This document shows, piece after piece, positions 3,586 through 38,408 of a stretch of 64,000 nucleotides of DNA (within the stretch, counting starts at the first letter, position 1; the number at the start of each line of letters is the position of its first letter). A model generated the notes under the pieces. That model worked only from the letters and a program-made list of their open reading frames with translations, ran no database searches and had not been told where the DNA came from. Origin of the DNA: Selaginella moellendorffii (lineage: Eukaryota > Plantae > Lycopodiophyta). The DNA lies in contig NW_003314269.1 in NCBI RefSeq assembly GCF_000143415.4, forward strand, positions 2,531,176 through 2,595,175. Reading direction: 5' to 3'. The translations under genes and the position numbers were made by a program.

Positions 3586-5616
3586 TTAAGTCGAGGCTCT
3601 TCGACGACGACTTTCAGCTGCGAAGATGTTAGCCAGAGAGATATATGGTGCCGAGTTCTCAGGGTCCAGCTCAACGACGCGCTCGGCTATATTTGATCCG
3701 GCAGACGCACCACCGTAAGCTGACCACACTCCCAGCAAGGCTCCCAAAGTTGTGCCATCGGGAAGGTATGGCATCCCTTGGAGTAGCTCCTGCGCATGCT
3801 TCAGCTGCCCAGCACGGCCGAGAACGTTGATCATGCAGCAGTAGTGCTCGGCAGACGGATTTAATCCGTAGTCCTGGTTCATGAAGCCGAAGTACTGCAA
3901 GCTTTCCTTGAAGAGGCCACCGTGACTACAGGCACTCAAAAGACCCGTGACCGTGATCTCATCGGGGCTGAGTCCGTCGAGACCCATCAGTTGGAAGAGC
4001 TCGACGGCAAGCTTACCATGGCCAGAATGGGCATAAGCAGCTATCATGGCTGTCCAGGACACAACGTTTTGTTTTGGGAGGCAGTCGAAGATCCTCCTGG
4101 CTTTGATCAGATGTCCTGCTTGGGCGTACGCGGCCACAAGCACAGTCCAGGCAACTATATCCCGCTCGGGCATCTTCTCAAAGGTGGCCCTTGCTTCGAG
4201 GAGCTGGTTGTTCTGGGCATAAGACTCCATTATCACGTTCCAGGACACCATGTCGGGCTGCGGCATTCCATCAAACAGGACCTTGGCCTCGTCCGGATAA
4301 CCGTGGTTGGCATAAGCAGAGATCATGGTGTTCCAGGCTACTCCATCACGTACCGGCATTCTTTCAAACATCTCTCGGGCCTCGTCCAGTTTTCCAGACT
4401 GAGCGTACGCAGTTATCATGTTGGTCCAGGCAACCAGGTTCCTCTCCGGCATAGTGTCGAAGGTTTCTTTGGCATCGCGAAGATGGCGGGCTTGTGCACA
4501 GCAGGTTATCATCGTCGACCACGCGACTACGTCGAGCTCGGGCATGCCGTCGAAGATCTGCTTCGCCGACCTCACGTCGGCTTCCTGCCCGTAGGCAGTG
4601 ATCAGAGCAGTCCAGGACGCGAGGTTTCGCTCGGGCATCCTGTCAAAGAGCTGCTTTGCCTCGGCTAAGTTGGCCTTTTGGACGTGGACTTGGATCATGG
4701 AGTTCCAGGAAACGATGTTCCGGTGCTTCATGCTGTCGAAGATGCTCTTGGCGGCCTCCAAGTTCCCGTGCTGGGCGTAACCGGTAAGCATCGCATTCCA
4801 GGATTGAGTTTCTTGTTCGGGAATCTCGTCAAAGATTAACTTTGCCTGTTCGATGCTCCCGCAGTGAACGTTGGCGGTGATGATGTTGATCCACGAGACG
4901 AAGTCGCGCTCGGGCATTCGGTGGAAGAGCTGGTTGGCCTCTTGGAGGTTCCCGCTGCGGGAGTAGACTTGGATCATCGCGTTCCAGGAAGCGATGTTCC
5001 TGCCAGGCATGGAATCGAAGAGTTTTTTCGCTGAGGGAACTTGGCCTTTGTCGGAATAAACGGTGATGATCGCAGTCCAGGAAACTACGTCTCTCTCCGG
5101 CATGCTTTGGAATATCTCCTGGGCTTTTTCCAGATGCCCGTTCTGGGCATATCCTGTTATCATCGCGTTCCATGTAACAAGGTTCCACTCGGGTATCTTT
5201 TGGAAAAGAATCTCTGCTTCTTGGATTCGACCGTGCTGGGAGTATGCCGCGAGGAGCCCATTCCAGGCGACGTGGTTGCGCTCGGGCATCTTGTCAAAAA
5301 CCCGTTTGGCATCGTCCAGATGCCCTCTTTGGGCATATGCCGTGAGGAGGATAGTCCACGAGAAAACGTTTGGGCGGTTGATGGCATCAAAGACCGCGCG
5401 TGCCTCGTCAATCCTGCCAAACTTTCCATAGACTTGGATCGTGAGATTGGCAAGGTAGAGATTCTGGCGATGCTCGCTCTCCAAGATCCGAGCCCGGATG
5501 CCTGATGCCTCCCGAAAGTCGCCGCTTGATCGGAGAAGCGCTGCAAAGTAGTCGGATCCATCGTCAGGAAGGGCTCGCAGTGGAGGCAGCACAGCCACAT
5601 TGCTGCTGGGATTCAT
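3586..5616 (-). CDS. PLS-class PPR protein with a long run of 31-aa (SS-type) motifs and a truncated E domain
   Basis: Repeated ...FDxMPERxxVSWNxMIxAYAQxG...; terminal L2/S2/E motifs (LSACSHGGL, HYCCMINVLGRAG, ELDPENSAPYISLANIF); no DYW domain. Confidence 0.95.
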   Translation of the reverse strand: MNPSSNVAVLPPLRALPDDGSDYFAALLRSSGDFREASGIRARILESEHRQNLYLANLTIQVYGKFGRIDEARAVFDAINRPNVFSWTILLTAYAQRGHLDDAKRVFDKMPERNHVAWNGLLAAYSQHGRIQEAEILFQKIPEWNLVTWNAMITGYAQNGHLEKAQEIFQSMPERDVVSWTAIITVYSDKGQVPSAKKLFDSMPGRNIASWNAMIQVYSRSGNLQEANQLFHRMPERDFVSWINIITANVHCGSIEQAKLIFDEIPEQETQSWNAMLTGYAQHGNLEAAKSIFDSMKHRNIVSWNSMIQVHVQKANLAEAKQLFDRMPERNLASWTALITAYGQEADVRSAKQIFDGMPELDVVAWSTMITCCAQARHLRDAKETFDTMPERNLVAWTNMITAYAQSGKLDEAREMFERMPVRDGVAWNTMISAYANHGYPDEAKVLFDGMPQPDMVSWNVIMESYAQNNQLLEARATFEKMPERDIVAWTVLVAAYAQAGHLIKARRIFDCLPKQNVVSWTAMIAAYAHSGHGKLAVELFQLMGLDGLSPDEITVTGLLSACSHGGLFKESLQYFGFMNQDYGLNPSAEHYCCMINVLGRAGQLKHAQELLQGMPYLPDGTTLGALLGVWSAYGGASAGSNIAERVVELDPENSAPYISLANIFAAESRRRRAST

Positions 5617-5921: not shown

Positions 5922-8091
5922 ATGGCGTCGATCTCTTCCGGGCCCTCGTCGCAGCTGACGATCAAATGGCTGGGCCTGGCAGCGTCGATTTGGATCCAGG
6001 CATTTGCCGGCAACGCCTACACCTTCTCGCATTTCTCGCCGCGGCTCAAGGCGGTGCTCCACTACTCGCAGATTGAGCTCAACAATCTGGGCGTGGCCAA
6101 GGACATCGGCGAGAATGTGGGGCTCATCACTGGCTATCTCTCCAACAAGCTCCCTGCATGGCTCATCCTCTTCATTGGGGGGCTGGAGGCGTTCCTCGGA
6201 TATGGCGTTCTTTGGCTCGTCGTCAGCGAAAGGATCGCTCCACTTCCATACTGGCAAGTAAGTTTTTCCTGACATCTAGAGATAAGTTTTGCGTTGCAAG
6301 TTCTCTTTCATTCTCGGATTTCTTTCTCATTTCCTGGCAAAGCACGAGGTAAAAAAAACAAATTTTTTTTTCAAGTGCTAGTTTCATTTTCTAGATTTTG
6401 CGTTTCGCTTATAGAGTTAGTCAACGAAAGAGTGGCTGAAAGAGTGGAAAAGCTTGCAAACTATTTTGGGTTTCTGAGCTTGAAAGTCCTTCCTTTTTCT
6501 TTTCTTCTAATATTCATATTTTGCAGATGTGTCTAGCTATTTGCATCGGTGCCAACAGTGCCACATTCTTCAACACCGCGGTTCTCGTCACAACCATGCG
6601 GAACTTCCCCCAGAGCCGAGGTACTGTTGTGGGAATCCTCAAAGGCTTCGTTGGTCTCAGTGGTGCCATTTTCACCCAGCTCTACACGTCCTTCCTCTTT
6701 AAGAACCCGGTCTCGTTGTTGCTGCTTCTTTCCACCAGTCCTTTCGCCGTGTCCGTGGCTTGCATGGGTTTCGTTCGTCCAGTTCCCGACGCCACCCGTG
6801 AACCCGAAGAGAAACGAAACTTTTTCCTCGTTCATGTTATTTGCGTGTCCCTCGCGCTCTACCTTCTCGTCGCCACTTTTGTCCAGGACTTTCTCCCGAG
6901 TAATCCAATCGTCTCCGGAGTTATAGCCACTGTCATGCTCTTGTTCCTCTTTGCTCCGGTTTTCGTCGCTCTCAAGTTCTTTATCCTCGGGTTGTTTAAG
7001 AGAACTGAGGAACCACCATCGAGACGTAACTTGGAAAAAGAAGACGGCGGCGTGAGCGAGCCCCTCGTGCGCGAGGAAACCGTCCAGTTCCAAATAGGAT
7101 CCACCGAAGAAGAACTCGGGCAATCTGACGAGGAGGACGCGAGAACTCTGCCAACTTTCCGGCACGACGATAGCTACATCGAGCGGACCGAGGAGGAGCT
7201 CTCCTGGGACGATCGAAAGAAATTCCCGCCGGGGATGAGCACCAGCGACAGCGCGACGAGTCTGAGTGAAGCCGAGATAGAAAACGATACGGACGTGCTG
7301 ATGGCCGTGGGAGAAGGCGCTGTGCCGAGGAAGAGAAAGCCGAGGCGTGGAGAGGACTTCAACTTGAGGCAGTCGCTGCTCAAGGCGGACTTCTGGCTGC
7401 TCTTTTTCACGTTCTTCTGTGGAGTCGGGTCGGGTGTGACGGCCATCAACAATCTGGGACAGATCGGCCAGGCGCAGGGATTCACCGACGTGACGATCTT
7501 CGTCACACTCCTGGGGATATGGAACTTCCTGGGCCGGCTTGGAGGCGGAGCAATCTCGGAGAAATACGTCCGGTAAGATCTCAGCTCGTAGAAGTTCTAT
7601 AGCGCCAATGGTCACTGACCAGCATTCTTTGCAGGAAGGCTGTTCCTCGGACTCTCTGGCTGGCCGGAGCCCAGTGCCTGATGGCAGTCGCGCACCTCTT
7701 GTTTGCATGGGCCGGCACGAGCTCGCTTCACGTCGGCTCCATCTTGCTGGGCTTTTGCTACGGCGTCCACTTCTCGGTCATGGTTCCCACCGCGTCGGAG
7801 CTCTTCGGCCTCAAGCACTTTGGCAAGATCTACAACTTCCTCACCATGGGCGACCCGGTGGGATCGCTGCTCTTCTCGGGGGTCATCGCCGGCTACCTCT
7901 ACGACATGGAGGCGCGAGACGGGCCGCAGGCCGACCAGTGCATTGGAGCTCACTGCTTCCGGCTCACGTTCTTGATCATGGCTGGAGTGTGCCTCGTCGG
8001 GTCCGCCGCCAGCGTCTACGTGAGCGTCAGGATCAAGCCCGTGTATCAATCTTTGTACAAGTCTGGCCGCGCGGTCAGGGACTTGCATTGA
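5922..8091 (+). CDS. Nodulin-like / NFD4-like major facilitator superfamily transporter (exons 5922-6257, 6527-7572, 7635-8091)
   Basis: KWLGLAASIWIQAFAGNAYTF, RNFPQSRGTVVGILKGFVGLSGAI, RRGEDFNLRQ, SELFGLKHFG, CIGAHCF; in-frame GT-AG splices. Confidence 0.93.
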
Positions 8092-31390: not shown

Positions 31391-31735
31391 CGTCGTGTGT
31401 AGCGATTGGTGGAATGCCCTCCACGGCTATCACACATGCTCGCCATTCCGGACCAGAATGCCCTCCCACATTCCGGATGAGAATCATCAAGGTACTAAGT
31501 CAACAGTCTTGAACTTTTGCATTGACTACGTTGACTTGCATTATGTTTGAGCGAACAAATAATCTTTAATTTCTTTCAAAACTCCTCTCTTGCTGGGCAA
31601 CTTCTGGTCATTCTTCTAAAACTTTTTGCAGCCAAATTGGATCGTGCTAGCTTAAAGATAGAACATTGCATGCTTGGAAGACAGGGAAATCCTGGATACT
31701 TAAGCCGGCGGGGCCAAGGATGTAGCCGGGTTTCA

Positions 31736-33499
31736 ATGAGCACCCAGTCATGGCTCCGAGTCTAGCGCGACCTCACGGAGCTGACCAAGGAGCCGCTTCA
31801 GGGCATCCAGGTTTGCAGCAATACCAACCGGCTGGACCGGATGTGCCTCGTCCTCTCGCCGCTCAGCGGCCCCTACGCGGGCGTCAACCTCCACCTCTAC
31901 GTCTGCATTCCTGTCGACTATCCCCACGCCCCTCCGCAGATTAGCATCCAGACGCCCGTCCCACACCCCAACGTCTTCGGCTCCTTCATCTGCTGCGACA
32001 TCCTCAAGCCCGCTTCCACGGGGCGGCTACACCCCGGCCTAGTTGCTCAAGTACCTCTTCCTCCAGCTTCTCAGCTTCTTCAGCAGCAAGTTTGTGCAGC
32101 AGGACTATGGCCACGAGGCGGTGGAGCTGGAGAGCTAGACCCTGGCGGACGGTGACTTAGACTCCTCGGATCCTTTGGATTGCGTGAAGCGCTTCTCGTG
32201 TGCCAACTGTGGATTCAATGTTGCTTTTCTCGGATTGAAGAGCGCTCCAGAATCGATTCTGTCGCGAGTCCAGCCAAGATTAAAAGTGAGTCTGATGATC
32301 ATCTCTCGATGGACCTTTTCGAGACGCTGGGCGTGGACTCCTGCCTCGAGATCGTGGACAGGCTCTCGGACCAGGAGGCCATAAGGCTGACACCGGCCTG
32401 CGGCGGCGTGAGAGAGCTGGTCAACACGGAGAACTTGCTGCTACGCCGGCAGCTGGTTTGCTTCTTTCTGCGCAAGACTTTCAAGGAGCGCGACACGATC
32501 CTGGGGATTGGAGTGTCGTGCCCCGTCGGCCCTGCGTTTCTCCTACGAGGATTTCAATCGCTTCCTCCAGCTGGTTCTGGACGAGGATCACTTCCGTCGC
32601 GCCAGACCGCTGATAGACGACTCGCTCAAGAGCCTTGCTCTCAGCTTCCCCAGGAAACCGACGGCTTCGGCAGTGCCAACTTCGGTGGTTCTCCAGACGC
32701 TGCCTGCGCTGAATGGTTTTCAGATCGCCAGAAAAGCGAGCTCAGCAACCCTAAAGTTGTGCATGGCACTGCAAGGGGCTATTGCCACCTCTTCTCCAAG
32801 CTGGTGCGAGAGGACCATCGCCTGGAAGAGGAAAACCAGCACAAGGTTGACGCGTTCATATCCAACATCGAGCTTCGCAGCAAGGATCACGTCCCCAACC
32901 TTGGCGAGTTCTTGACGTATTTACTGGGTTGGGTTCGTATGATTTTACGTAAGATTCACAAACAATAAACAACTGAAAGTTTGCGGGCTCTTCCTGATTC
33001 TCACCAGAAACGTCCTTTGGGCCTTGGAGGTATACCTTGCGTACTTTGAGCCAGCCAACTATCCCTCCGAGGTCCGTCTCCAGCACACGTTTTTGAGGCA
33101 AATGCCGATGGCCTCAGGCCGGTGATGTTCCAGATTTGCTTCTTTCATATGACGAGATCAACAAAATTCGACTAGAGTTATGGGTTCCCATCAGACGAGA
33201 TGTGCTCCAGGCTTCTCCAGACCATCAAGGACATCTATAGCGTCAAGGAGTACCTCCGGATATTTTGATCTGGTGGGATGTGGAATATGATCAAGCTTCT
33301 CAAGCAGGCCATTGTCTCGAGCGAGAAGAGAGGGTATCATGTGGTACGCTACTCTAGACACGAGCTCTATGTGCTGAGAAGAGCCGTGGAGCGGAAGTGC
33401 CCTCCTCCCTCGGGATTGAACATGTCAAGGCTCCGGTGCATTGCCACGCAAATTTTCTTCCCGAATGAAAACAAACGTCACAACAGGCAAAGATGGTGA
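31736..33499 (+). pseudogene. Frameshifted, deleted tandem copy of the 34170 UBC-fusion gene
   Basis: Collinear high similarity with 34170-36143 from ATG to stop; several stops, frameshifts and internal deletions. Confidence 0.92.
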
Positions 33500-34169
33500 A
33501 AAACCAATTCACCTTATGATCTTTTATTTTCTTTTTATTGTTGTGATATTCTCTACCAGGACATTATCGCTTCCCTGCATTTCCTGTTCTTCGTCCAGCC
33601 TCACATCAACAAAACTGGACAAGTTGACGAAGCCAACGTGACTGTCTTTGATCGGTTGGAACCCAGAGCCCGGAAGCCAATCGATCCAACCGTGGATACC
33701 AACCGTGGATATCATGTTCTTTGCGTTTCATAACTTGGTGAATTGTGGATGTTTCAACGTGTTTTGTGTTTTTTTAGACTTTTCCTATTGGGGATTTTCT
33801 GCACCAGATGAAATTTCCTCTGGAGGTATCCAACACAGTATTTCTTCCTTTGTCTTTTTAAGCAAACTTCTGACTAAAATGGTAGTAGATATATCTAGAA
33901 TATGCTTGAATATTATAAGATATTCTACAATTTAACGGTTGTTATTCAATTTTTTATTTATAATTTATAAACTTTCTTAAACTCTTTCTAGTATATTCTT
34001 TTTTTTCTATCAGCTAATAGATTGTTTATAAATTGGAAACATGCTTATAATTTTAAACTTATTTGATCAATTGGATTAGTAAGTAATTTAAATAGCCACT
34101 TTACTTGGAGGACAAGGAAATTGTGAATACTTAAGCCATACCTGGGTTTAGGATTACAATTTCCAGCCA

Positions 34170-36143
34170 ATGAGCACCAAGTCATGGCAAGTCCGAGTCC
34201 AGCGCGACCTCACGGAGCTGACCAAGGAGCCGCTCCAGGGCATCCAGGTTTGCACCTATGCCGACCAGCTCGACCATATGTGCCTCGTCCTCTCGCCGCT
34301 CAGCGGCCCCTACGCGGGCGTCAACCTCCACCTCGACGTCCGCATACCAGCTGACTATCCTCACGGCCCTCCGCAGGTTAGCATACAGACGCCCGTCCGA
34401 CACCCCAACGTCTTCGACTCCTACATCTGCTGCGACATCCTCAACCCGGTTTCCACGAGGTATGACTACAATCCTCAGGGCGGTCATTGGCAAATCTACA
34501 ATGGCGGTTACAGCCCGGGCTACTTGCTCAAGTACCTCTTTCTCCAGCTTCTCAGCTTCTTTAGTAGCAAGTTTGTGCAGCAGGACTATGGTGGCAAGGC
34601 AGTGGAGCTGGAGAGCTATTCCCAAAGGGAACGTAGCTTTGACCCCTTGGATCCATTGGATTGGGTGAAGCGCTACTCGTGTGCTAACTGTGGATTCAAT
34701 GTTGCTTTTCCTGGTGTGAAGAGCGCTCCAGAGTCGACTACTGTCACTAGTCCGGCTATGATTGAAGGTGAGTTTGATGATCATCTCTCTCTGGTGGAGA
34801 GTCCCAACCTTTTCGAGAGGCTGGACACTGATTGCTGCCTCGAGATCGTGGACAGGCTCTCAGACCAGGATGCCATACGGCTGACTCGGGTCTACAGAGG
34901 CGTGAAAGAGCTCGTCAACTCGGAGAACTTGCTGCTGCGCCGGCAGCTGGTTTGCTTCTTTCTGCGCAAGACTTTCAAGGAGAGCGACACGGTCCTGGGG
35001 ATTGGAGTGTCGTGCCCCGCCGGCGGTGGAAAGCCCTTTGTGGCAGCGGTTGATCTCTTCTCATACGAGGCGTTTAACAGCCATGGCGTGAGGAAGGGCA
35101 TCACGGGCGAGGATTTTGATTACTTCCTCCCGCTGGTTCTGGACGAGGATCACTTCCAGCGTGCCAGACCGCTGATAGACGACTCGCTCAAGAGCCTTGC
35201 TCTCAGCTTCCCCAGGAAACCGACGGCTTCGGCAGCGCCAACTTCGGTGGTTCTCCAGACGCTGCCTGCGCTGATGAACACCATGGTTTTCACGCTCGTC
35301 CAGTCTTGCGATCAGCAGAAGAGCGAGCTCAGCAACCACACAGTTGTGCACGCCTCGGAGAAGGCACTACAAGGCTACTGCCTGCTGTTCCACCTCTTCT
35401 CCAAGCTGGTACGGGAGCACCATTACCTGAGACGGGAAATTCAGCGCAAGGTTGACGCGTTCATCTCCAATATCGAGTGTCGCGGCAAGGATCACGTCCC
35501 CGACCTGGGCGAGTTCTTAACGTATTTGCTGGTAGCTCCCAATGCCGTGGAGTGGGACAAAGTATGCGGGCTGTTCTTGGGCGAGATTCTCACCAGGAAC
35601 ACCCTCTGGGCCCTGCAGAAGAAGCCATACCTCGCGTACGTGGAGCCGGACAACTTCCCCTCGGAGGTCCGTCTCCAGCACACGTTTGAGGCAAATGCCG
35701 ACGGCCTCAGGCTGGTGATGTTCCAGATTTGCTTCTTCCGTATGACGAGATCAACGAACTTCGACCAGAGGTACGGGTTCCCATCGGGCGAGATGAGCGC
35801 GCAGCTTCTCCAGACCATCAAGGACATCTACAGCGTCAAGGCATACGATGTTTTCCTCCGGATCTTTGGGTTTCCAGTTGATCCCGCGGGATGGAAGTGG
35901 AACATGATCAAGCTTCTCAAGCAGGCCATTGTCTCAAGCGAGAAGAAAGGGTATCATGTGGTACGCTACTCGAAAGAGGAGCTCTATATGCTGCGAAGAC
36001 CCGTGGAGCCGAACTGCCCTCCTCCGCCAGGATGGAACAATCCAAGGCCCCGTTATATTGCCACTAAGAGTTTCTTCCCGAATGAGAACAAGCGTCAAGC
36101 TCCCGGACGGAACCAAGGAGATCACAACAGGCGAAGGTGGTGA
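34170..36143 (+). CDS. Intronless 657-aa protein: N-terminal ubiquitin-conjugating (E2) domain, CxxC, F-box-like helix, large C-terminal domain
   Basis: RVQRDLTEL, GPYAG, PADYPHGPP, HPNVFDSYICCDIL (HPN plus catalytic Cys), YSPGYLLKYLFLQLLSFF; CANCG; LDTDCCLEIVDRLSDQD. Confidence 0.88.
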   Translation: MSTKSWQVRVQRDLTELTKEPLQGIQVCTYADQLDHMCLVLSPLSGPYAGVNLHLDVRIPADYPHGPPQVSIQTPVRHPNVFDSYICCDILNPVSTRYDYNPQGGHWQIYNGGYSPGYLLKYLFLQLLSFFSSKFVQQDYGGKAVELESYSQRERSFDPLDPLDWVKRYSCANCGFNVAFPGVKSAPESTTVTSPAMIEGEFDDHLSLVESPNLFERLDTDCCLEIVDRLSDQDAIRLTRVYRGVKELVNSENLLLRRQLVCFFLRKTFKESDTVLGIGVSCPAGGGKPFVAAVDLFSYEAFNSHGVRKGITGEDFDYFLPLVLDEDHFQRARPLIDDSLKSLALSFPRKPTASAAPTSVVLQTLPALMNTMVFTLVQSCDQQKSELSNHTVVHASEKALQGYCLLFHLFSKLVREHHYLRREIQRKVDAFISNIECRGKDHVPDLGEFLTYLLVAPNAVEWDKVCGLFLGEILTRNTLWALQKKPYLAYVEPDNFPSEVRLQHTFEANADGLRLVMFQICFFRMTRSTNFDQRYGFPSGEMSAQLLQTIKDIYSVKAYDVFLRIFGFPVDPAGWKWNMIKLLKQAIVSSEKKGYHVVRYSKEELYMLRRPVEPNCPPPPGWNNPRPRYIATKSFFPNENKRQAPGRNQGDHNRRRW

Positions 36144-36475
36144 ACTGCTTGATCTTCAAAGTTTCATGGAACAAAATGGTAAATGATTTTTCTTTTTTTT
36201 CTTCTTTTATGTTTCAAGGAATCTATACCCATGATAAGCAATAGTGCAGTGTCGACAAAATACTGTGGAAGTCAAGGATGATGTGCCGCGTATAAGAAAA
36301 CTCTGGATGTTCACGGGAGGGAGTCAAAGAATCTTTCGATGAATCCGGAGAAAGAAATAGACTTCATGATAGAATATGGATTTTAAGCGTGGAAGTTTCT
36401 CTTTGCCGACTCTAGGTGAAAGAAAATGGTCTCCGCCCTTCCTTCGCTAGGAAGTATCGACACTGCCGCTTGGCT

Positions 36476-38408
36476 ATGGAGGACCCTCTCGACGGCGCCG
36501 CCTTGTCAATAGAAAATGGGAGTAGCACCAACGATCTCTTGAAGGTCCTTGTCCCCAAATTTCTCTCTTGTTTTTCTCACTTCTGGTCTTCAATGCCAAA
36601 TGCCAGAGGGAAGTTGGGTTTAGCGCGGACTCGATCCCAGTTAGCCCTTCACGTCCCTGTTTCCAGGCAAGCGATTGTTCTTCGTCTTTGTTAGAGATGC
36701 CTGTTGTTCTAGTTTTTCTCCAAGTTTGTGTGAGAGATTGGCTGTGGTTTGTGGCAGAAAGTGTGGCGGTCATGGCTATCGATCAACGATTCCTGGACCT
36801 CCAAATGGTGGTATGCGGCGGTCCACAACATCACTGCCGTGATTGGAGCTGGAGTTCTTTCGCTCCACGGAGCTATGGTCGACTTAAGCTGGTAACATAT
36901 CTTTACTTGTGTGAATACTATTTAGTGCCATTTAACAAAGACCTCCTTGATTTTCCAGGGCTCCAGGGATTTTCGTGCTGTGCGTTATCGGCATCATAAG
37001 TCTCAGCACAATGTGGCAAATGATCGAGCTCCACGAGCTCGATGGGAAACGCATGGACAGATACCATGAGCTGGGCCAGAGGGCTTTCGGAAAGAAGCTC
37101 GGGCTCTGGATTGTGGTACCCATGCAAATGCTCGTCGAGATCGGTGTCGACACCGTCTACCTCCTCACCGCTGGAAAATCCATCCGGAAGATCCACAGCC
37201 TTCTCTATGGTTGCCCAATTCAAGACTCTTCATGTAACTGGGAGCTGCGATATTGCATCATGGCGTTTGCATCGGTCCAGCTTCTCCTCTCGCAGCTTCC
37301 ACATTTCACCTCCATCACCTGGGTTTCGATTATTGCCGCTTTCATGTCTCTCGGGTACGTAGATTTCAAAGTTTTTTTGTCAACTTTTTCACTTGGTTTT
37401 ATCATGCAAGAACAGCTACTCCACAATTGCTTGGGTCGCCACCTTAATGCGTGAACGAAGCCCCACAGTCAGCTATGAATTTCCAAAAGCAACTTCTACT
37501 GCGGATGTTATTTTCGGGGTGTTTAGCTCGCTGGGCCAGATCTCGTTTGCATTTGCGGGACACAATATCGTTCTTGAGATCCAGGCCACTATTCCTTCCA
37601 CCATTGAGAGACCCTCCAAGATCTCGGCCTGGAATGGAGCTCTCCTGGCCTACACGATGACCATCTTGTGTTATTTCCCAAATGCCCTGGTCGGGTATTA
37701 CGTTTTTGGGAATCAAAAGAACCATGACATGCACGTCCTTGAGATTCTGGACAAGCCTGTTTGGCTCGTCGCACTAGGAAATGCAATGGTGGTGACGCAT
37801 ATGTGTGGTGGCTTTCAGGTTAGCCATTTCTTTTCTTAAAGATCGAACTTCTTGGTTTTCATAGTTTTGGATTTTCAGATATTTGCAATGCCGCTGTTTG
37901 ACAATGTGGAGATGCTTCTCACAAACCTGTGGAAGGTTAATGGAGGGATCAATCTTAGATTACTTGTTCGATCAATTTACGTTGGTAAGTAACTTCTTCT
38001 TAGCTTAAAATCTGAAGGATTTTTTATTTTATTTTTGCAGCATTTACATGCTTTCTTGCTGTGACATTTCCTTTCTTTGACGATTTGCTCGCTTTTGTTG
38101 GGGGAATAGCCTTCGTCCCAACAACATTCCTGGTACTTTTTGAACTTGAGGAAATTGCTATTTACAAAGAGATCTTCTTCTCGGTTGCAGCTACCTTGTA
38201 TCATCTGGCAAATTCTTCGCAAGCCCAGAACATTCGGATTGCCATGGCTAGCGAACATGGTAAAATTGAATAAGTAGATTTTCCACCTTTGATTTTATAA
38301 GCTTTTCAGGCTTGCATAGGAGTGGGCTTCTTTCTTACAATCGCTTCCACAGCTGGTGGGCTTCGAAACATTCTCCTCAAGGCTTCGCATTACCAGTTCT
38401 ACAAATAA
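36476..38408 (+). CDS. Lysine/histidine transporter (LHT)-like amino acid permease, multi-exon
   Basis: KWWYAAVHNITAVIGAGVLSL, GKRMDRYHELGQRAFG, FAFAGHNIVLEIQATIPST..PSK, TFPFFDDLLAFVGG. Confidence 0.92.

What the first reader, a model, noticed from the sequence alone, without database searches (positions are those of the whole stretch)
34170..36143. Intronless E2-CxxC-F-box-like fusion protein: possible horizontally acquired self-contained ubiquitination module
Seen: an intact E2 fold with HPN and a catalytic Cys, a long insertion after the Cys (like an extended loop), then CANCG, an F-box-like helix and about 400 aa with motifs such as LVCFFLRK, FLPLVLDEDHF, HASEKALQGY, KDHVPDLGEFL, RNTLWAL and LRLVMFQ. 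It has no introns among heavily intronic neighbours. Known: angiosperm E2 classes do not have this architecture. From recall, similar long N-terminal-UBC proteins occur in fungi, protists and giant viruses. Inference: HGT or patchy retention; it may combine E2 activity and SCF docking in one chain.
Basis: partly seen in the sequence, partly recalled or inferred. Interest (0 to 1): 0.7.

Follow-up and report, generated by a model that had tools for sequence, protein, structure and literature searches.

The report
Fungus-derived E2–F-box–UBR4-like ligase gene
This spikemoss gene is a real, transcribed, intronless gene of fungal origin whose single protein chain joins a ubiquitin-conjugating enzyme, an F-box and a module shaped like the E2-docking ligase module of the giant ligase UBR4; as far as I could find, that combination has not been described.

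Summary
Window 34170-36143 (+) is an intact 657-aa ORF in Selaginella moellendorffii. It has a UBC/E2 domain (HPN 78-80, catalytic Cys87), a conserved CxxC (171/174), an F-box (aa 211-261) and a conserved C-terminal domain.

The main new result concerns that C-terminal domain (aa 257-587). A high-confidence model matches only the hemiRING-UZI E3 module of human UBR4 (Z 19.3) and the RING/cap-helical region of yeast Ubr1 (Z 11.8). Both dock an E2. The protein therefore looks like a single-chain E2 + E3 module with an SKP1 handle.

The family is mainly fungal. It also occurs in protists, rotifers and giant viruses. The only plant members found are Selaginella, Ceratodon-type mosses and the fern Adiantum. 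These nest inside Fungi next to Glomeromycotina. A tree with plants outside Fungi is rejected (AU p 0.0001). A single plant clade is not rejected (p 0.49).

The gene is intronless in Selaginella, moss and Rhizophagus. It lies between ordinary plant genes on both haplotypes and is transcribed at a low level.

The fungal origin of a Selaginella "ubiquitin-conjugating protein" was already published (Li et al. 2018). The domain architecture, the moss and fern members and the UBR4 link appear to be new. Biochemical function is untested.

The parts
34170..36143 (+). Intact intronless ORF, 657 aa: E2 - CxxC - F-box - UBR4-like E3 module
   Evidence: ORF. (RNA reads on the sense strand, no joints). 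(the same 657-aa ORF is intact on the other haplotype).
34182..34673 (+). UBC (E2) fold, aa 5-168; the Pfam UQ_con match covers aa 9-134
34401..34409 (+). HPN motif (His78-Pro79-Asn80)
   Evidence: aligned with the HPN of UBC4/UBE2D. His78 is conserved in at least 90% of 54 family members.
34428..34430 (+). Catalytic Cys87 (first Cys of ICCDIL)
   Evidence: aligned with the active-site Cys of UBC4/UBE2D and nearly invariant in the family.
34446..34505 (+). Insertion after the active-site Cys (aa 93-112), modelled as a beta-hairpin. About 15 aa of it are specific to this gene.
   Evidence: Absent from the paralogue P0002; the corresponding 45 bp do not align in the upstream pseudogene.
34680..34691 (+). 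CxxC knuckle (Cys171, Cys174), nearly invariant in fungi and plants
34728..34799 (+). Low-confidence (probably disordered) linker, aa 187-210
   Evidence: pLDDT below 50.
34800..34952 (+). F-box, aa 211-261. It is a divergent copy (LDTDCCLEIVDRL in place of LPxEILxxI..L).
34938..35930 (+). hemiRING-like beta subdomain plus UZI-like helical bundle, aa 257-587. This is a structural homologue of the UBR4 E3 module. Invariant Cys262 (34953-34955) and His328 (35151-35153) lie in it.
   Evidence: 8b5w Z 19.3, rmsd 3.7 A, 293 residues aligned; 7mey_A Z 11.8. (invariant residues).
31734..33480 (+). Degraded tandem copy (pseudogene) of the same gene, present only on this haplotype
   Evidence: 81-90% nucleotide identity, many indels and frameshifts. 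(no RNA). (absent from the other haplotype).
33481..34167 (.). 687-bp spacer between the pseudogene and the start codon. It has no counterpart on the other haplotype.

Best explanation
The ORF is a functional nuclear gene of Selaginella moellendorffii. It belongs to a mainly fungal protein family that entered early land plants by horizontal transfer from a Mucoromycota fungus close to the arbuscular-mycorrhizal Glomeromycotina. It was intronless in the donor lineage and has stayed intronless.

The protein reads, in order:
- a catalytically equipped E2 (HPN, Cys87);
- a CxxC knuckle;
- a disordered linker;
- an F-box;
- a module with the fold of the hemiRING-UZI E3 module of UBR4 and the RING-cap region of Ubr1, which in those ligases docks and modestly activates the E2 Rad6/UBE2A.

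Most likely mechanism (inferred, not shown): E1 charges Cys87 with ubiquitin. The C-terminal UBR-type module holds the E2 of the same chain (or a second E2) in a RING-like manner. The F-box ties the unit to SKP1, and possibly through it to cullin-1 or to substrates. The result would be a single-chain E2/E3 ligase.

The canonical C2HC zinc site of the hemiRING is not kept within the module. Only Cys262 and His328 are invariant. I infer that the conserved upstream CxxC may supply the two missing ligands.
For: Gene reality:
- Intact ORF, intact on both haplotypes with 26 nucleotide differences and dN/dS 0.40.
- Low-level sense-strand RNA without splicing, while the adjacent duplicate has decayed.

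Domains:
- UQ_con E 1e-13; HPN and Cys in register with UBC4/UBE2D.
- F-box by family profile, in 12 of 54 members by Pfam, and by fold.
- C-terminal model pLDDT 92.6, pTM 0.90. Foldseek gives only the UBR4 E3 module at E 1e-4, probability 1.0.
- VIA-align: Z 19.3 over 293 residues to UBR4 4833-5183, Z 11.8 to Ubr1 1218-1644, next best Z 5.2.
- The same two are the only hits at Z 8 or more among 48,161 representative chains.
- The full-length model has pTM 0.88, which suggests a fixed arrangement of the E2 and the C-terminal module.
- The role of the UBR4 module and its zinc ligands C4838/C4841/H4887/C4890 come from PMC10873205.

Origin:
- The nearest non-Selaginella relatives are Glomeromycotina at 38-44% identity.
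- ML trees place plants inside a Mucoromycota clade, sister to Glomeromycotina (SH-aLRT 98 and 96).
- AU test rejects plants outside Fungi (delta lnL 56, p 0.0001).
- Plant-gene neighbours: Aa_trans, Sacchrp_dh, HMG-box and PPR in Selaginella; Dof in Ceratodon; LHC and P450 in the moss-like contig.
- The gene is intronless in Ceratodon, the moss-like contig and R. irregularis.
- Independent published HGT call: PMC5982333.
Against: - No biochemical data exist for any member that I could find.
- The link to UBR4 is structural only. A family profile of aa 257-620 finds no PDB sequence at E up to 10, and Pfam finds nothing there.
- Three of the four hemiRING zinc ligands have no conserved counterpart within the module.
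- This copy's F-box lacks the Leu-Pro of the consensus and is below Pfam's threshold.
- The E2 domain is most like UBC4/UBE2D rather than Rad6/UBE2A, the partner of UBR4 and Ubr1.
- Expression is low, and in two RNA runs it comes only from the other allele.
- The tree searches were 'quick' mode, and the tested groups were formally named after a first tree had been seen.
Confidence: 0.6

Rival explanations
1. A conventional F-box substrate receptor with an E2 attached. On this reading the C-terminal UBR4-like fold serves only as a substrate-binding or scaffold domain and has no E2-docking or E3 activity. The E2 domain works in trans, or simply raises the local E2 concentration at an SCF complex.
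For: In F-box proteins the domain after the F-box is normally the substrate receptor. The hemiRING zinc ligand set is not conserved. There is no sequence-level similarity to UBR4. A shared fold does not show a shared function (caveats printed).
Against: The match covers both subdomains (hemiRING and UZI) at Z 19, far above background, and the only two strong matches are both E2-docking modules. The fusion to an E2 is constant across fungi, protists, plants and giant viruses. The high pTM of the full-length model suggests that the E2 and this module pack together.
Confidence: 0.3
2. Several independent transfers from mycorrhiza-like fungi into the lycophyte, moss and fern lineages, instead of one ancient transfer followed by many losses.
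For: In the free trees the plants are paraphyletic: Adiantum branches first, and Selaginella and the mosses join only weakly (SH-aLRT 80, or unresolved). The distribution within plants is very patchy, with no Physcomitrium, liverwort, hornwort or seed-plant hit.
Against: A single plant clade costs only 0.63 lnL (AU p 0.49). All plant copies attach at the same place, on the stem of Glomeromycotina and not inside its crown. Plant-to-plant identities (about 37-45%) are as low as plant-to-Glomeromycotina identities, which fits great age.
Confidence: 0.35
3. Vertical inheritance of an ancient eukaryotic gene with patchy retention in a few non-seed plants (hidden paralogy and massive loss).
For: The family also occurs in diatoms, other protists and rotifers, so it is old and widespread.
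Against: Constraining Fungi to be a clade that excludes plants is rejected (delta lnL 56.1, AU p 0.0001). Plants sit inside Mucoromycota, not with the protist sequences. No green alga or seed plant turned up in three searches of 5.8 billion proteins.
Confidence: 0.07
4. Fungal contamination of the plant assemblies, or delivery by a giant virus instead of a fungus.
For: Glomeromycotina live inside plant tissue. Giant viruses encode proteins with the same C-terminal module and an E2 annotation.
Against: The gene lies in megabase-size scaffolds between plant genes on both Selaginella haplotypes, on two Ceratodon chromosomes in two isolates, and next to an LHC gene in the moss-like contig. The viral proteins are only 20-23% identical in the structural alignment, against 38-44% for Glomeromycotina. 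The IMG/VR scans found no relative.
Confidence: 0.03

Closest known systems
UBR4 hemiRING-UZI E3 module (PDB 8B5W, and 8BTL with UBE2A; Barnsby-Greer et al. 2024, PMC10873205)
   Same: Same two-subdomain fold: a beta-rich RING-like part with a long beta-AB loop, packed on an 11-helix bundle. Z 19.3, rmsd 3.7 A, 293 residues, aa 257-587 against UBR4 4833-5183. By offset, invariant Cys262 falls at the position of the first zinc ligand, Cys4838. Both are associated with an E2.
   Different: No detectable sequence similarity. The C2HC zinc ligands are not conserved within the module (Leu265 sits at the Cys4841 position). The protein is 657 aa instead of 5,183 and has no UBR box. The E2 is fused in cis and is UBC4-like, not Rad6-like. 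An F-box directly precedes the module.
Yeast Ubr1 RING plus cap helical domain bound to Ubc2 (PDB 7MEY)
   Same: Second-best structural match, Z 11.8, 276 residues, Ubr1 1218-1644. It is also an E2-docking module of the UBR family.
   Different: Ubr1 has a full two-zinc RING and belongs to a 1,950-aa N-degron ligase.
E2/E3 hybrid enzymes UBE2O and BIRC6
   Same: A UBC domain embedded in a larger chain that brings its own targeting or ligase function (general knowledge; reviews found).
   Different: Unrelated accessory domains. Neither has an F-box or a UBR-type module, and both are animal giants. No homology beyond the UBC fold was shown here.
F-box proteins of SCF ligases (SKP2, FBXW7, FBXO31, Cdc4)
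   Same: Three-helix F-box fold and profile similarity.
   Different: The F-box is internal, preceded by an E2 and followed by an E3-like module instead of WD40, LRR or other receptor domains. This copy lacks the Leu-Pro signature.
Published fungus-to-Selaginella HGT of a 'ubiquitin-conjugating protein' (Li et al. 2018, Front Plant Sci 9:701, PMC5982333)
   Same: Same gene family and same conclusion on origin: S. moellendorffii XP_002963132.1 paired with R. irregularis ERZ95571.1, domain listed as UQ_con.
   Different: That paper treats it as Selaginella-specific and lists only UQ_con. The moss and fern members, the F-box, the UBR4-like module, the intron status and the haplotype structure are not in it. 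I could not confirm that XP_002963132.1 is this allele, because the window's own accession is masked.
Giant-virus 'E2 ubiquitin-conjugating enzymes' (Tetraselmis virus 1 A0A2P0VP69, Terrestrivirus, Hyperionvirus)
   Same: Predicted structures share the F-box/UBR4-like C-terminal part of this protein (Foldseek E 8e-18 to 9e-17, TM by query 0.66-0.75, 20-23% identity), and they are annotated as E2s.
   Different: Much more distant than the fungal members. Their sequences could not be fetched for the tree.

Membership tests
Ubiquitin-conjugating enzyme (UBC/E2) superfamily | UBC fold recognised by the family profile above its curated threshold | tested here: met
   Pfam UQ_con 51.4 bits against a cut-off of 27. 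Foldseek TM about 0.7 by target to UbcH5 structures.
Ubiquitin-conjugating enzyme (UBC/E2) superfamily | HPN motif and active-site cysteine in register | tested here: met
   His78-Pro79-Asn80 and Cys87 align with UBC4/UBE2D. They are conserved in at least 90% of 54 members.
Ubiquitin-conjugating enzyme (UBC/E2) superfamily | E1-dependent thioester with ubiquitin or a UBL | not testable with these tools
   Needs a biochemical assay.
F-box proteins | F-box sequence profile above Pfam's gathering threshold in this protein | tested here: not met
   PF00646 15.5 bits against 20.5, E 0.016. LDTD replaces the LPxE consensus.
F-box proteins | Homology of the segment to F-boxes at family level | tested here: met
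   A profile of aa 212-262 from 53 members hits only F-box proteins in the PDB, best 1.7e-8. 12 of 54 members match Pfam F-box, best 1.5e-7.
F-box proteins | Three-helix F-box fold | tested here: met
   Model aa 211-261 against Skp1-bound F-boxes: Z 4.4-5.9, rmsd 1.6-2.8 A, 41-51 residues.
F-box proteins | Binding to SKP1 | not testable with these tools
   Needs a pull-down or co-expression experiment.
UBR-type E3 module (hemiRING/RING + UZI, as in UBR4 and Ubr1) | Two-subdomain fold: RING-like beta part interlocked with an 11-helix UZI bundle | tested here: met
   Z 19.3 (8b5w), 19.2 (8btl_A), 11.8 (7mey_A). The next hit is at 5.2, and these are the only Z of 8 or more among 48,161 chains.
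UBR-type E3 module (hemiRING/RING + UZI, as in UBR4 and Ubr1) | C2HC zinc site of the hemiRING (UBR4 C4838, C4841, H4887, C4890; PMC10873205) | tested here: not met
   Within aa 257-345 only Cys262 and His328 are invariant. Position 265 is Leu, and no HxxC is present. A composite site with Cys171/Cys174 is conjecture.
UBR-type E3 module (hemiRING/RING + UZI, as in UBR4 and Ubr1) | Detectable sequence homology to UBR4/UBR1 | tested here: inconclusive
   No PDB sequence hit at E up to 10 with the family profile. No Pfam family matches on this part. Profile-profile comparison with UBR4 orthologues was not possible, because I had no UBR4 sequence from a tool.
UBR-type E3 module (hemiRING/RING + UZI, as in UBR4 and Ubr1) | Docking of an E2 and stimulation of ubiquitin transfer | not testable with these tools
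   Needs a binding and discharge assay. The pTM of 0.88 for the full-length model is only suggestive of cis packing.
Fungus-to-plant horizontally transferred genes | Recipient sequences nested within the donor clade with statistical support | tested here: met
   (SH-aLRT 98 and 96 for the Mucoromycota+plants clade). (AU p 0.0001 against plants outside Fungi).
Fungus-to-plant horizontally transferred genes | Integration in recipient chromosomes (not contamination) | tested here: met
   Flanking plant genes on both haplotypes. Ceratodon chromosomes 2 and 7 in two isolates, with a Dof neighbour. RNA reads from Selaginella.
Fungus-to-plant horizontally transferred genes | Absence from the recipient's wider relatives (seed plants, algae) | tested here: met
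   Three word-index searches of 5.8 billion proteins, one of them with a plant-only profile, found only Selaginella, Ceratodon and moss-like, and Adiantum members. Caveat: two of the searches were capped at 8,000 candidates, and the exhaustive HMMER search was not run.

The most novel reading that the evidence does not exclude
A previously undescribed class of single-chain ubiquitin ligases in which an E2 is permanently fused to a zinc-poor UBR4-type hemiRING-UZI module and an F-box. The conserved CxxC after the E2 would complete the hemiRING's zinc site in trans and lock the E2 onto its own E3 module, and SKP1 would supply the link to substrates or to cullin-1. The family would be widespread in fungi, protists and giant viruses, and would have been handed to the first land plants by their mycorrhizal partners.
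Probability: 0.35. Interest if true: 0.8.

Novelty: new variant of a known kind. Interest (0 to 1): 0.62.

Why it matters
The hemiRING-UZI module was described only in 2024 and was presented as peculiar to the UBR ligases. A compact 650-aa family that carries the same fold fused to an E2 and an F-box gives a small, tractable system for asking how this atypical module handles an E2. It also suggests that the module is older and more mobile than was thought. For plant evolution it adds a well-supported case of a gene from the Glomeromycotina lineage kept in lycophytes, mosses and ferns and lost or never present in seed plants. This extends the published Selaginella-only report. The haplotype pair, one with and one without a 2.4-kb insert at the start codon, offers a natural test of cis-regulation.

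Tried and rejected
- Sequence searches of the C-terminal part against Pfam and against PDB sequences with a family profile gave only the F-box. Only the fold searches were informative.
- Pattern-based scans of IMG/VR with alignments A2 and A1 found no viral relative. The BFVD fold search did find them, but the viral sequences could not be brought into the tree.
- Contamination was considered and rejected on genomic context.
- Rad6-like identity of the fused E2 was considered because UBR4 and Ubr1 use Rad6. It was not supported: the top 60 PDB sequence hits are mainly UBC4/UBE2D and UBE2T types, and none is UBE2A/Rad6.
- The weak RWD hit was dismissed as the known E2-like fold relationship.
- The exhaustive HMMER representative search was not run. 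It returns no names and only the best 150 hits, so it could neither name plant members nor show UBR4, and the operators had asked for restraint.
- Literature searches for an E2 fused to an F-box or to hemiRING/UZI found nothing.
- The search of earlier findings by words returned nothing on this family.
Full report
**1. The observation**

Window 34170-36143 (+) is one uninterrupted 657-aa ORF.

- Pfam places a UQ_con domain at aa 9-134 (E 1.1e-13, above the curated cut-off). It also gives a sub-threshold F-box at aa 216-255 (15.5 bits against 20.5).
- PDB E2s of the UBC4/UBE2D type align over aa 9-92, with HPN (78-80) and the active-site Cys (Cys87, the first Cys of ICCDIL) in register.
They coincide with the most conserved columns of a 54-member family alignment.
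- The stretch between Cys87 and the Y-S-P motif is 26 residues, against about 7 in UbcH5. Part of this insertion is family-wide. About 15 aa are specific to this gene and its allele.

**2. Organism and gene reality**

The best database match is Selaginella moellendorffii LOC9641780 (97% identity), which is the allele on the other haplotype scaffold. A 657-aa sequence from a 3.7-Mb contig sits in the same 90%-identity cluster with its accession masked, and I take it to be the window's own protein. A 47%-identical paralogue exists at a second locus, again on two scaffolds.

The other haplotype (L003, GL377565.1) carries the same uninterrupted 657-aa ORF. It has 26 nucleotide differences (11 synonymous, 15 non-synonymous; dN/dS 0.40). 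The neighbours are the same: a saccharopine-dehydrogenase-like gene and an HMG-box gene upstream, and an Aa_trans gene and a PPR gene downstream.

True RNA-seq raw reads (X16, X17; about 12% of each run read) cover the ORF at 0.3-2.9x, mostly with the first mate on the minus strand (X16 entirely). In most stranded libraries that means plus-strand RNA. There are no joints inside the ORF. The downstream transporter gene shows GT..AG introns in the same reads. The gene is therefore real, intronless and weakly transcribed.

**3. The F-box**

A profile built from aa 212-262 of 53 members hits almost only F-box proteins among 177,635 PDB sequences, and only F-box proteins at E below about 0.8 (FBXO31 1.7e-8, KDM2B, FBXL17, SKP2, FBXL5, FBXW7, cyclin F and others). 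Twelve of the 54 members match Pfam F-box individually (best 1.5e-7).

In the model of this protein, aa 211-261 superpose on F-boxes from many Skp1 complexes (Z 4.4-5.9, rmsd 1.6-2.8 A). The copy is divergent: LDTDCCLEIVDRL stands in place of LPxEILxxI..L. Ascomycete and protist members keep the LP(D/N)E consensus. SKP1 binding is plausible but untested.

**4. The C-terminal 400 aa**

No sequence method assigns this part. AlphaFold2 with the family alignment gives confident models. The full-length model has pLDDT 89.3 and pTM 0.88. The model of aa 211-645 has pLDDT 92.6 and pTM 0.90.

- Foldseek against the PDB returns only two significant matches: the E3 module of human UBR4 alone (8b5w) and the same module in complex with UBE2A (8btl). 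Both have E about 1e-4 and probability 1.0.
- VIA-align gives Z 19.3 (rmsd 3.7 A, 293 residues; aa 257-587 against UBR4 4833-5183, which covers both the hemiRING and the UZI subdomain). It gives Z 11.8 for yeast Ubr1 residues 1218-1644 in its Ubc2 complex. The next hit is at Z 5.2.
- An exhaustive alignment against 48,161 representative chains finds the same two as the only matches at Z 8 or more.

According to Barnsby-Greer et al. (PMC10873205), this UBR4 module is the E2-docking catalytic module. Its hemiRING binds one zinc through C4838, C4841, H4887 and C4890, and UBR1-3 have an analogous RING-UZI.

In the present family the start offset puts invariant Cys262 at the C4838 position, and Leu265 at the C4841 position. 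The only other invariant potential ligand in the subdomain is His328, and there is no HxxC. The zinc criterion is therefore not met within the module.

A pair of Cys or His residues directly after the UBC domain (Cys171-x-x-Cys174 here) is conserved throughout the family. It could complete a four-ligand site. This is conjecture, because I had no access to coordinates. The pTM of 0.88 for a two-part chain suggests that the E2 and the C-terminal module have a fixed mutual arrangement. This too is an inference.

**5. Distribution and origin**

The family is large in Fungi: Glomeromycotina, Endogonales, many chytrids, Mycena, Armillaria and other Agaricales, Morchella, Orbiliales and scattered other Ascomycota. 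It is also present in a diatom and in unnamed protists.

Structure-based searches add three more groups:
- a rotifer cluster carrying UQ_con;
- an ascomycete cluster carrying UQ_con, TerD and F-box-like domains;
- giant-virus 'E2' proteins from Tetraselmis virus 1, Terrestrivirus and Hyperionvirus (E 8e-18 to 9e-17).

Among plants, three searches of 5.8 billion proteins, one of them with a plant-only profile, found only the following:
- Selaginella, at two loci;
- Ceratodon purpureus, on chromosomes 2 and 7 in both sequenced isolates;
- moss-like metagenome and Logan sequences;
- Adiantum nelumboides, with two proteins.

The moss-like contig carries a chlorophyll a/b-binding gene and P450 genes. 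The Ceratodon copy lies next to a Dof transcription-factor gene.

ML trees (LG+C20 PMSF, 72 and 38 rows) put the protist sequences outside. They put the plants inside a clade with Endogonales and Glomeromycotina (SH-aLRT 98 and 96), on the stem of Glomeromycotina. Forcing Fungi to exclude plants costs 56.1 lnL (AU p 0.0001). Forcing the five plant rows into one clade costs 0.63 lnL (p 0.49).

The topology therefore supports transfer from a Mucoromycota fungus close to the arbuscular-mycorrhizal lineage into early land plants. One ancient event with many losses, and a few parallel events, both remain possible.

The gene is a single exon in Selaginella, Ceratodon, the moss-like contig and Rhizophagus irregularis. 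The lack of introns is therefore inherited from the donor lineage and is not in itself a sign of retro-copying.

**6. What is already known**

Li et al. [quoted passage not shown] The HGT claim for this family is thus published, as a Selaginella-specific case with only the E2 domain noted. I found no paper that describes an E2 fused to an F-box or to a hemiRING/UZI module.

**7. Mechanism**

Shown:
- an E2 domain with its catalytic residues;
- an F-box fold;
- a UBR4/Ubr1-type E3-module fold;
- conservation of the three-part architecture across kingdoms.

Inferred: the chain is an E2/E3 hybrid in which the UBR-type module holds the fused E2 (or recruits a second one), and the F-box connects to SKP1. 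The main functional rival is that the C-terminal fold has been re-used as a substrate receptor of an otherwise ordinary F-box protein.

**8. Local genome structure**

Directly upstream, 31734-33480 is a decayed copy of the gene (81-90% nucleotide identity, many indels and frameshifts). It starts exactly 2 bp before the position of the ATG and is followed by a 687-bp spacer. The other haplotype lacks this whole 2,434-bp block. An RNA-derived contig in run X3 shows the insert-free junction 31733>34168.

In X16 and X17, every variant position listed within the ORF carries the other haplotype's letter in all the reads that cover it. All 15 variant letters seen in the reads and contigs match L003. 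In the same reads the neighbouring transporter gene shows both alleles. Contigs of run X1, which is RNA because one contig crosses the splice junction at 37358, match the window's allele exactly. Both alleles can therefore be expressed, but the depth is too low to settle whether there is allelic bias.

**9. Verdict**

The origin story is a published case that this work extends to mosses and ferns. The new element is the architecture E2 - CxxC - F-box - UBR4-like E3 module.

Noticed in passing
window 31734-33480 (+), spacer 33481-34167: A decayed tandem copy of the gene (81-90% nucleotide identity, frameshifts and deletions, no RNA reads) plus a 687-bp spacer sits immediately before the start codon. 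The whole 2,434-bp block is absent from the other haplotype (L003). The copy is far more diverged than the roughly 2% between haplotypes, so the other haplotype probably lost it by recombination between the copies' 5' ends (11 shared bases at the joint).
   Followed up: yes
window 34170-36143, compared with 36425-37400: In RNA runs X16 and X17, every variant position listed within the ORF carries the other haplotype's letter in all the reads that cover it, while the adjacent Aa_trans gene shows both alleles in the same reads. This suggests allele-biased expression, possibly because the insert separates this allele from its promoter. Run X1 contigs carry the window allele, so the bias is not universal. 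Depth is low.
   Followed up: partly
L003:5001-7248 (GL377565.1): NCBI's model XP_002960943.2 (644 aa) for the other allele ends before the stop of the uninterrupted 657-aa ORF that is present there. The annotation probably mis-models the 3' end.
   Followed up: partly
BFVD hits of model mf0aa72b8df8c: Beyond the three giant-virus 'E2' proteins, several uncharacterised, RING-finger and VWA-domain proteins of Klosneuvirus-like viruses, Marseillevirus and Pandoravirus match the same model more weakly (the best eight at E 4e-8 to 1e-3). UBR-type UZI-like modules may be common in giant viruses.
   Followed up: no
ESM Atlas clusters: The same C-terminal fold occurs in a rotifer cluster in which 42% of members carry UQ_con (TM 0.65), and in a 929-aa ascomycete architecture of UQ_con + TerD + F-box-like (TM 0.70 by query).
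   Followed up: no
window 36663-36759: In the downstream Aa_trans gene the RNA reads show two alternative 91-base skips four bases apart (36663>36755 and 36667>36759) with non-canonical ends (CA..GG and CA..GA). This may be an alignment ambiguity or an allele-specific intron. It is unexplained.
   Followed up: no
window 34417, 34423, 34445: Near the catalytic Cys the window allele reads D83, Y85 and N92, where the other allele and the pseudogene read G, F and K. The changes are therefore derived on this allele. The same VFDSYIC string occurs in some ascomycete members, so it is probably tolerated.
   Followed up: partly
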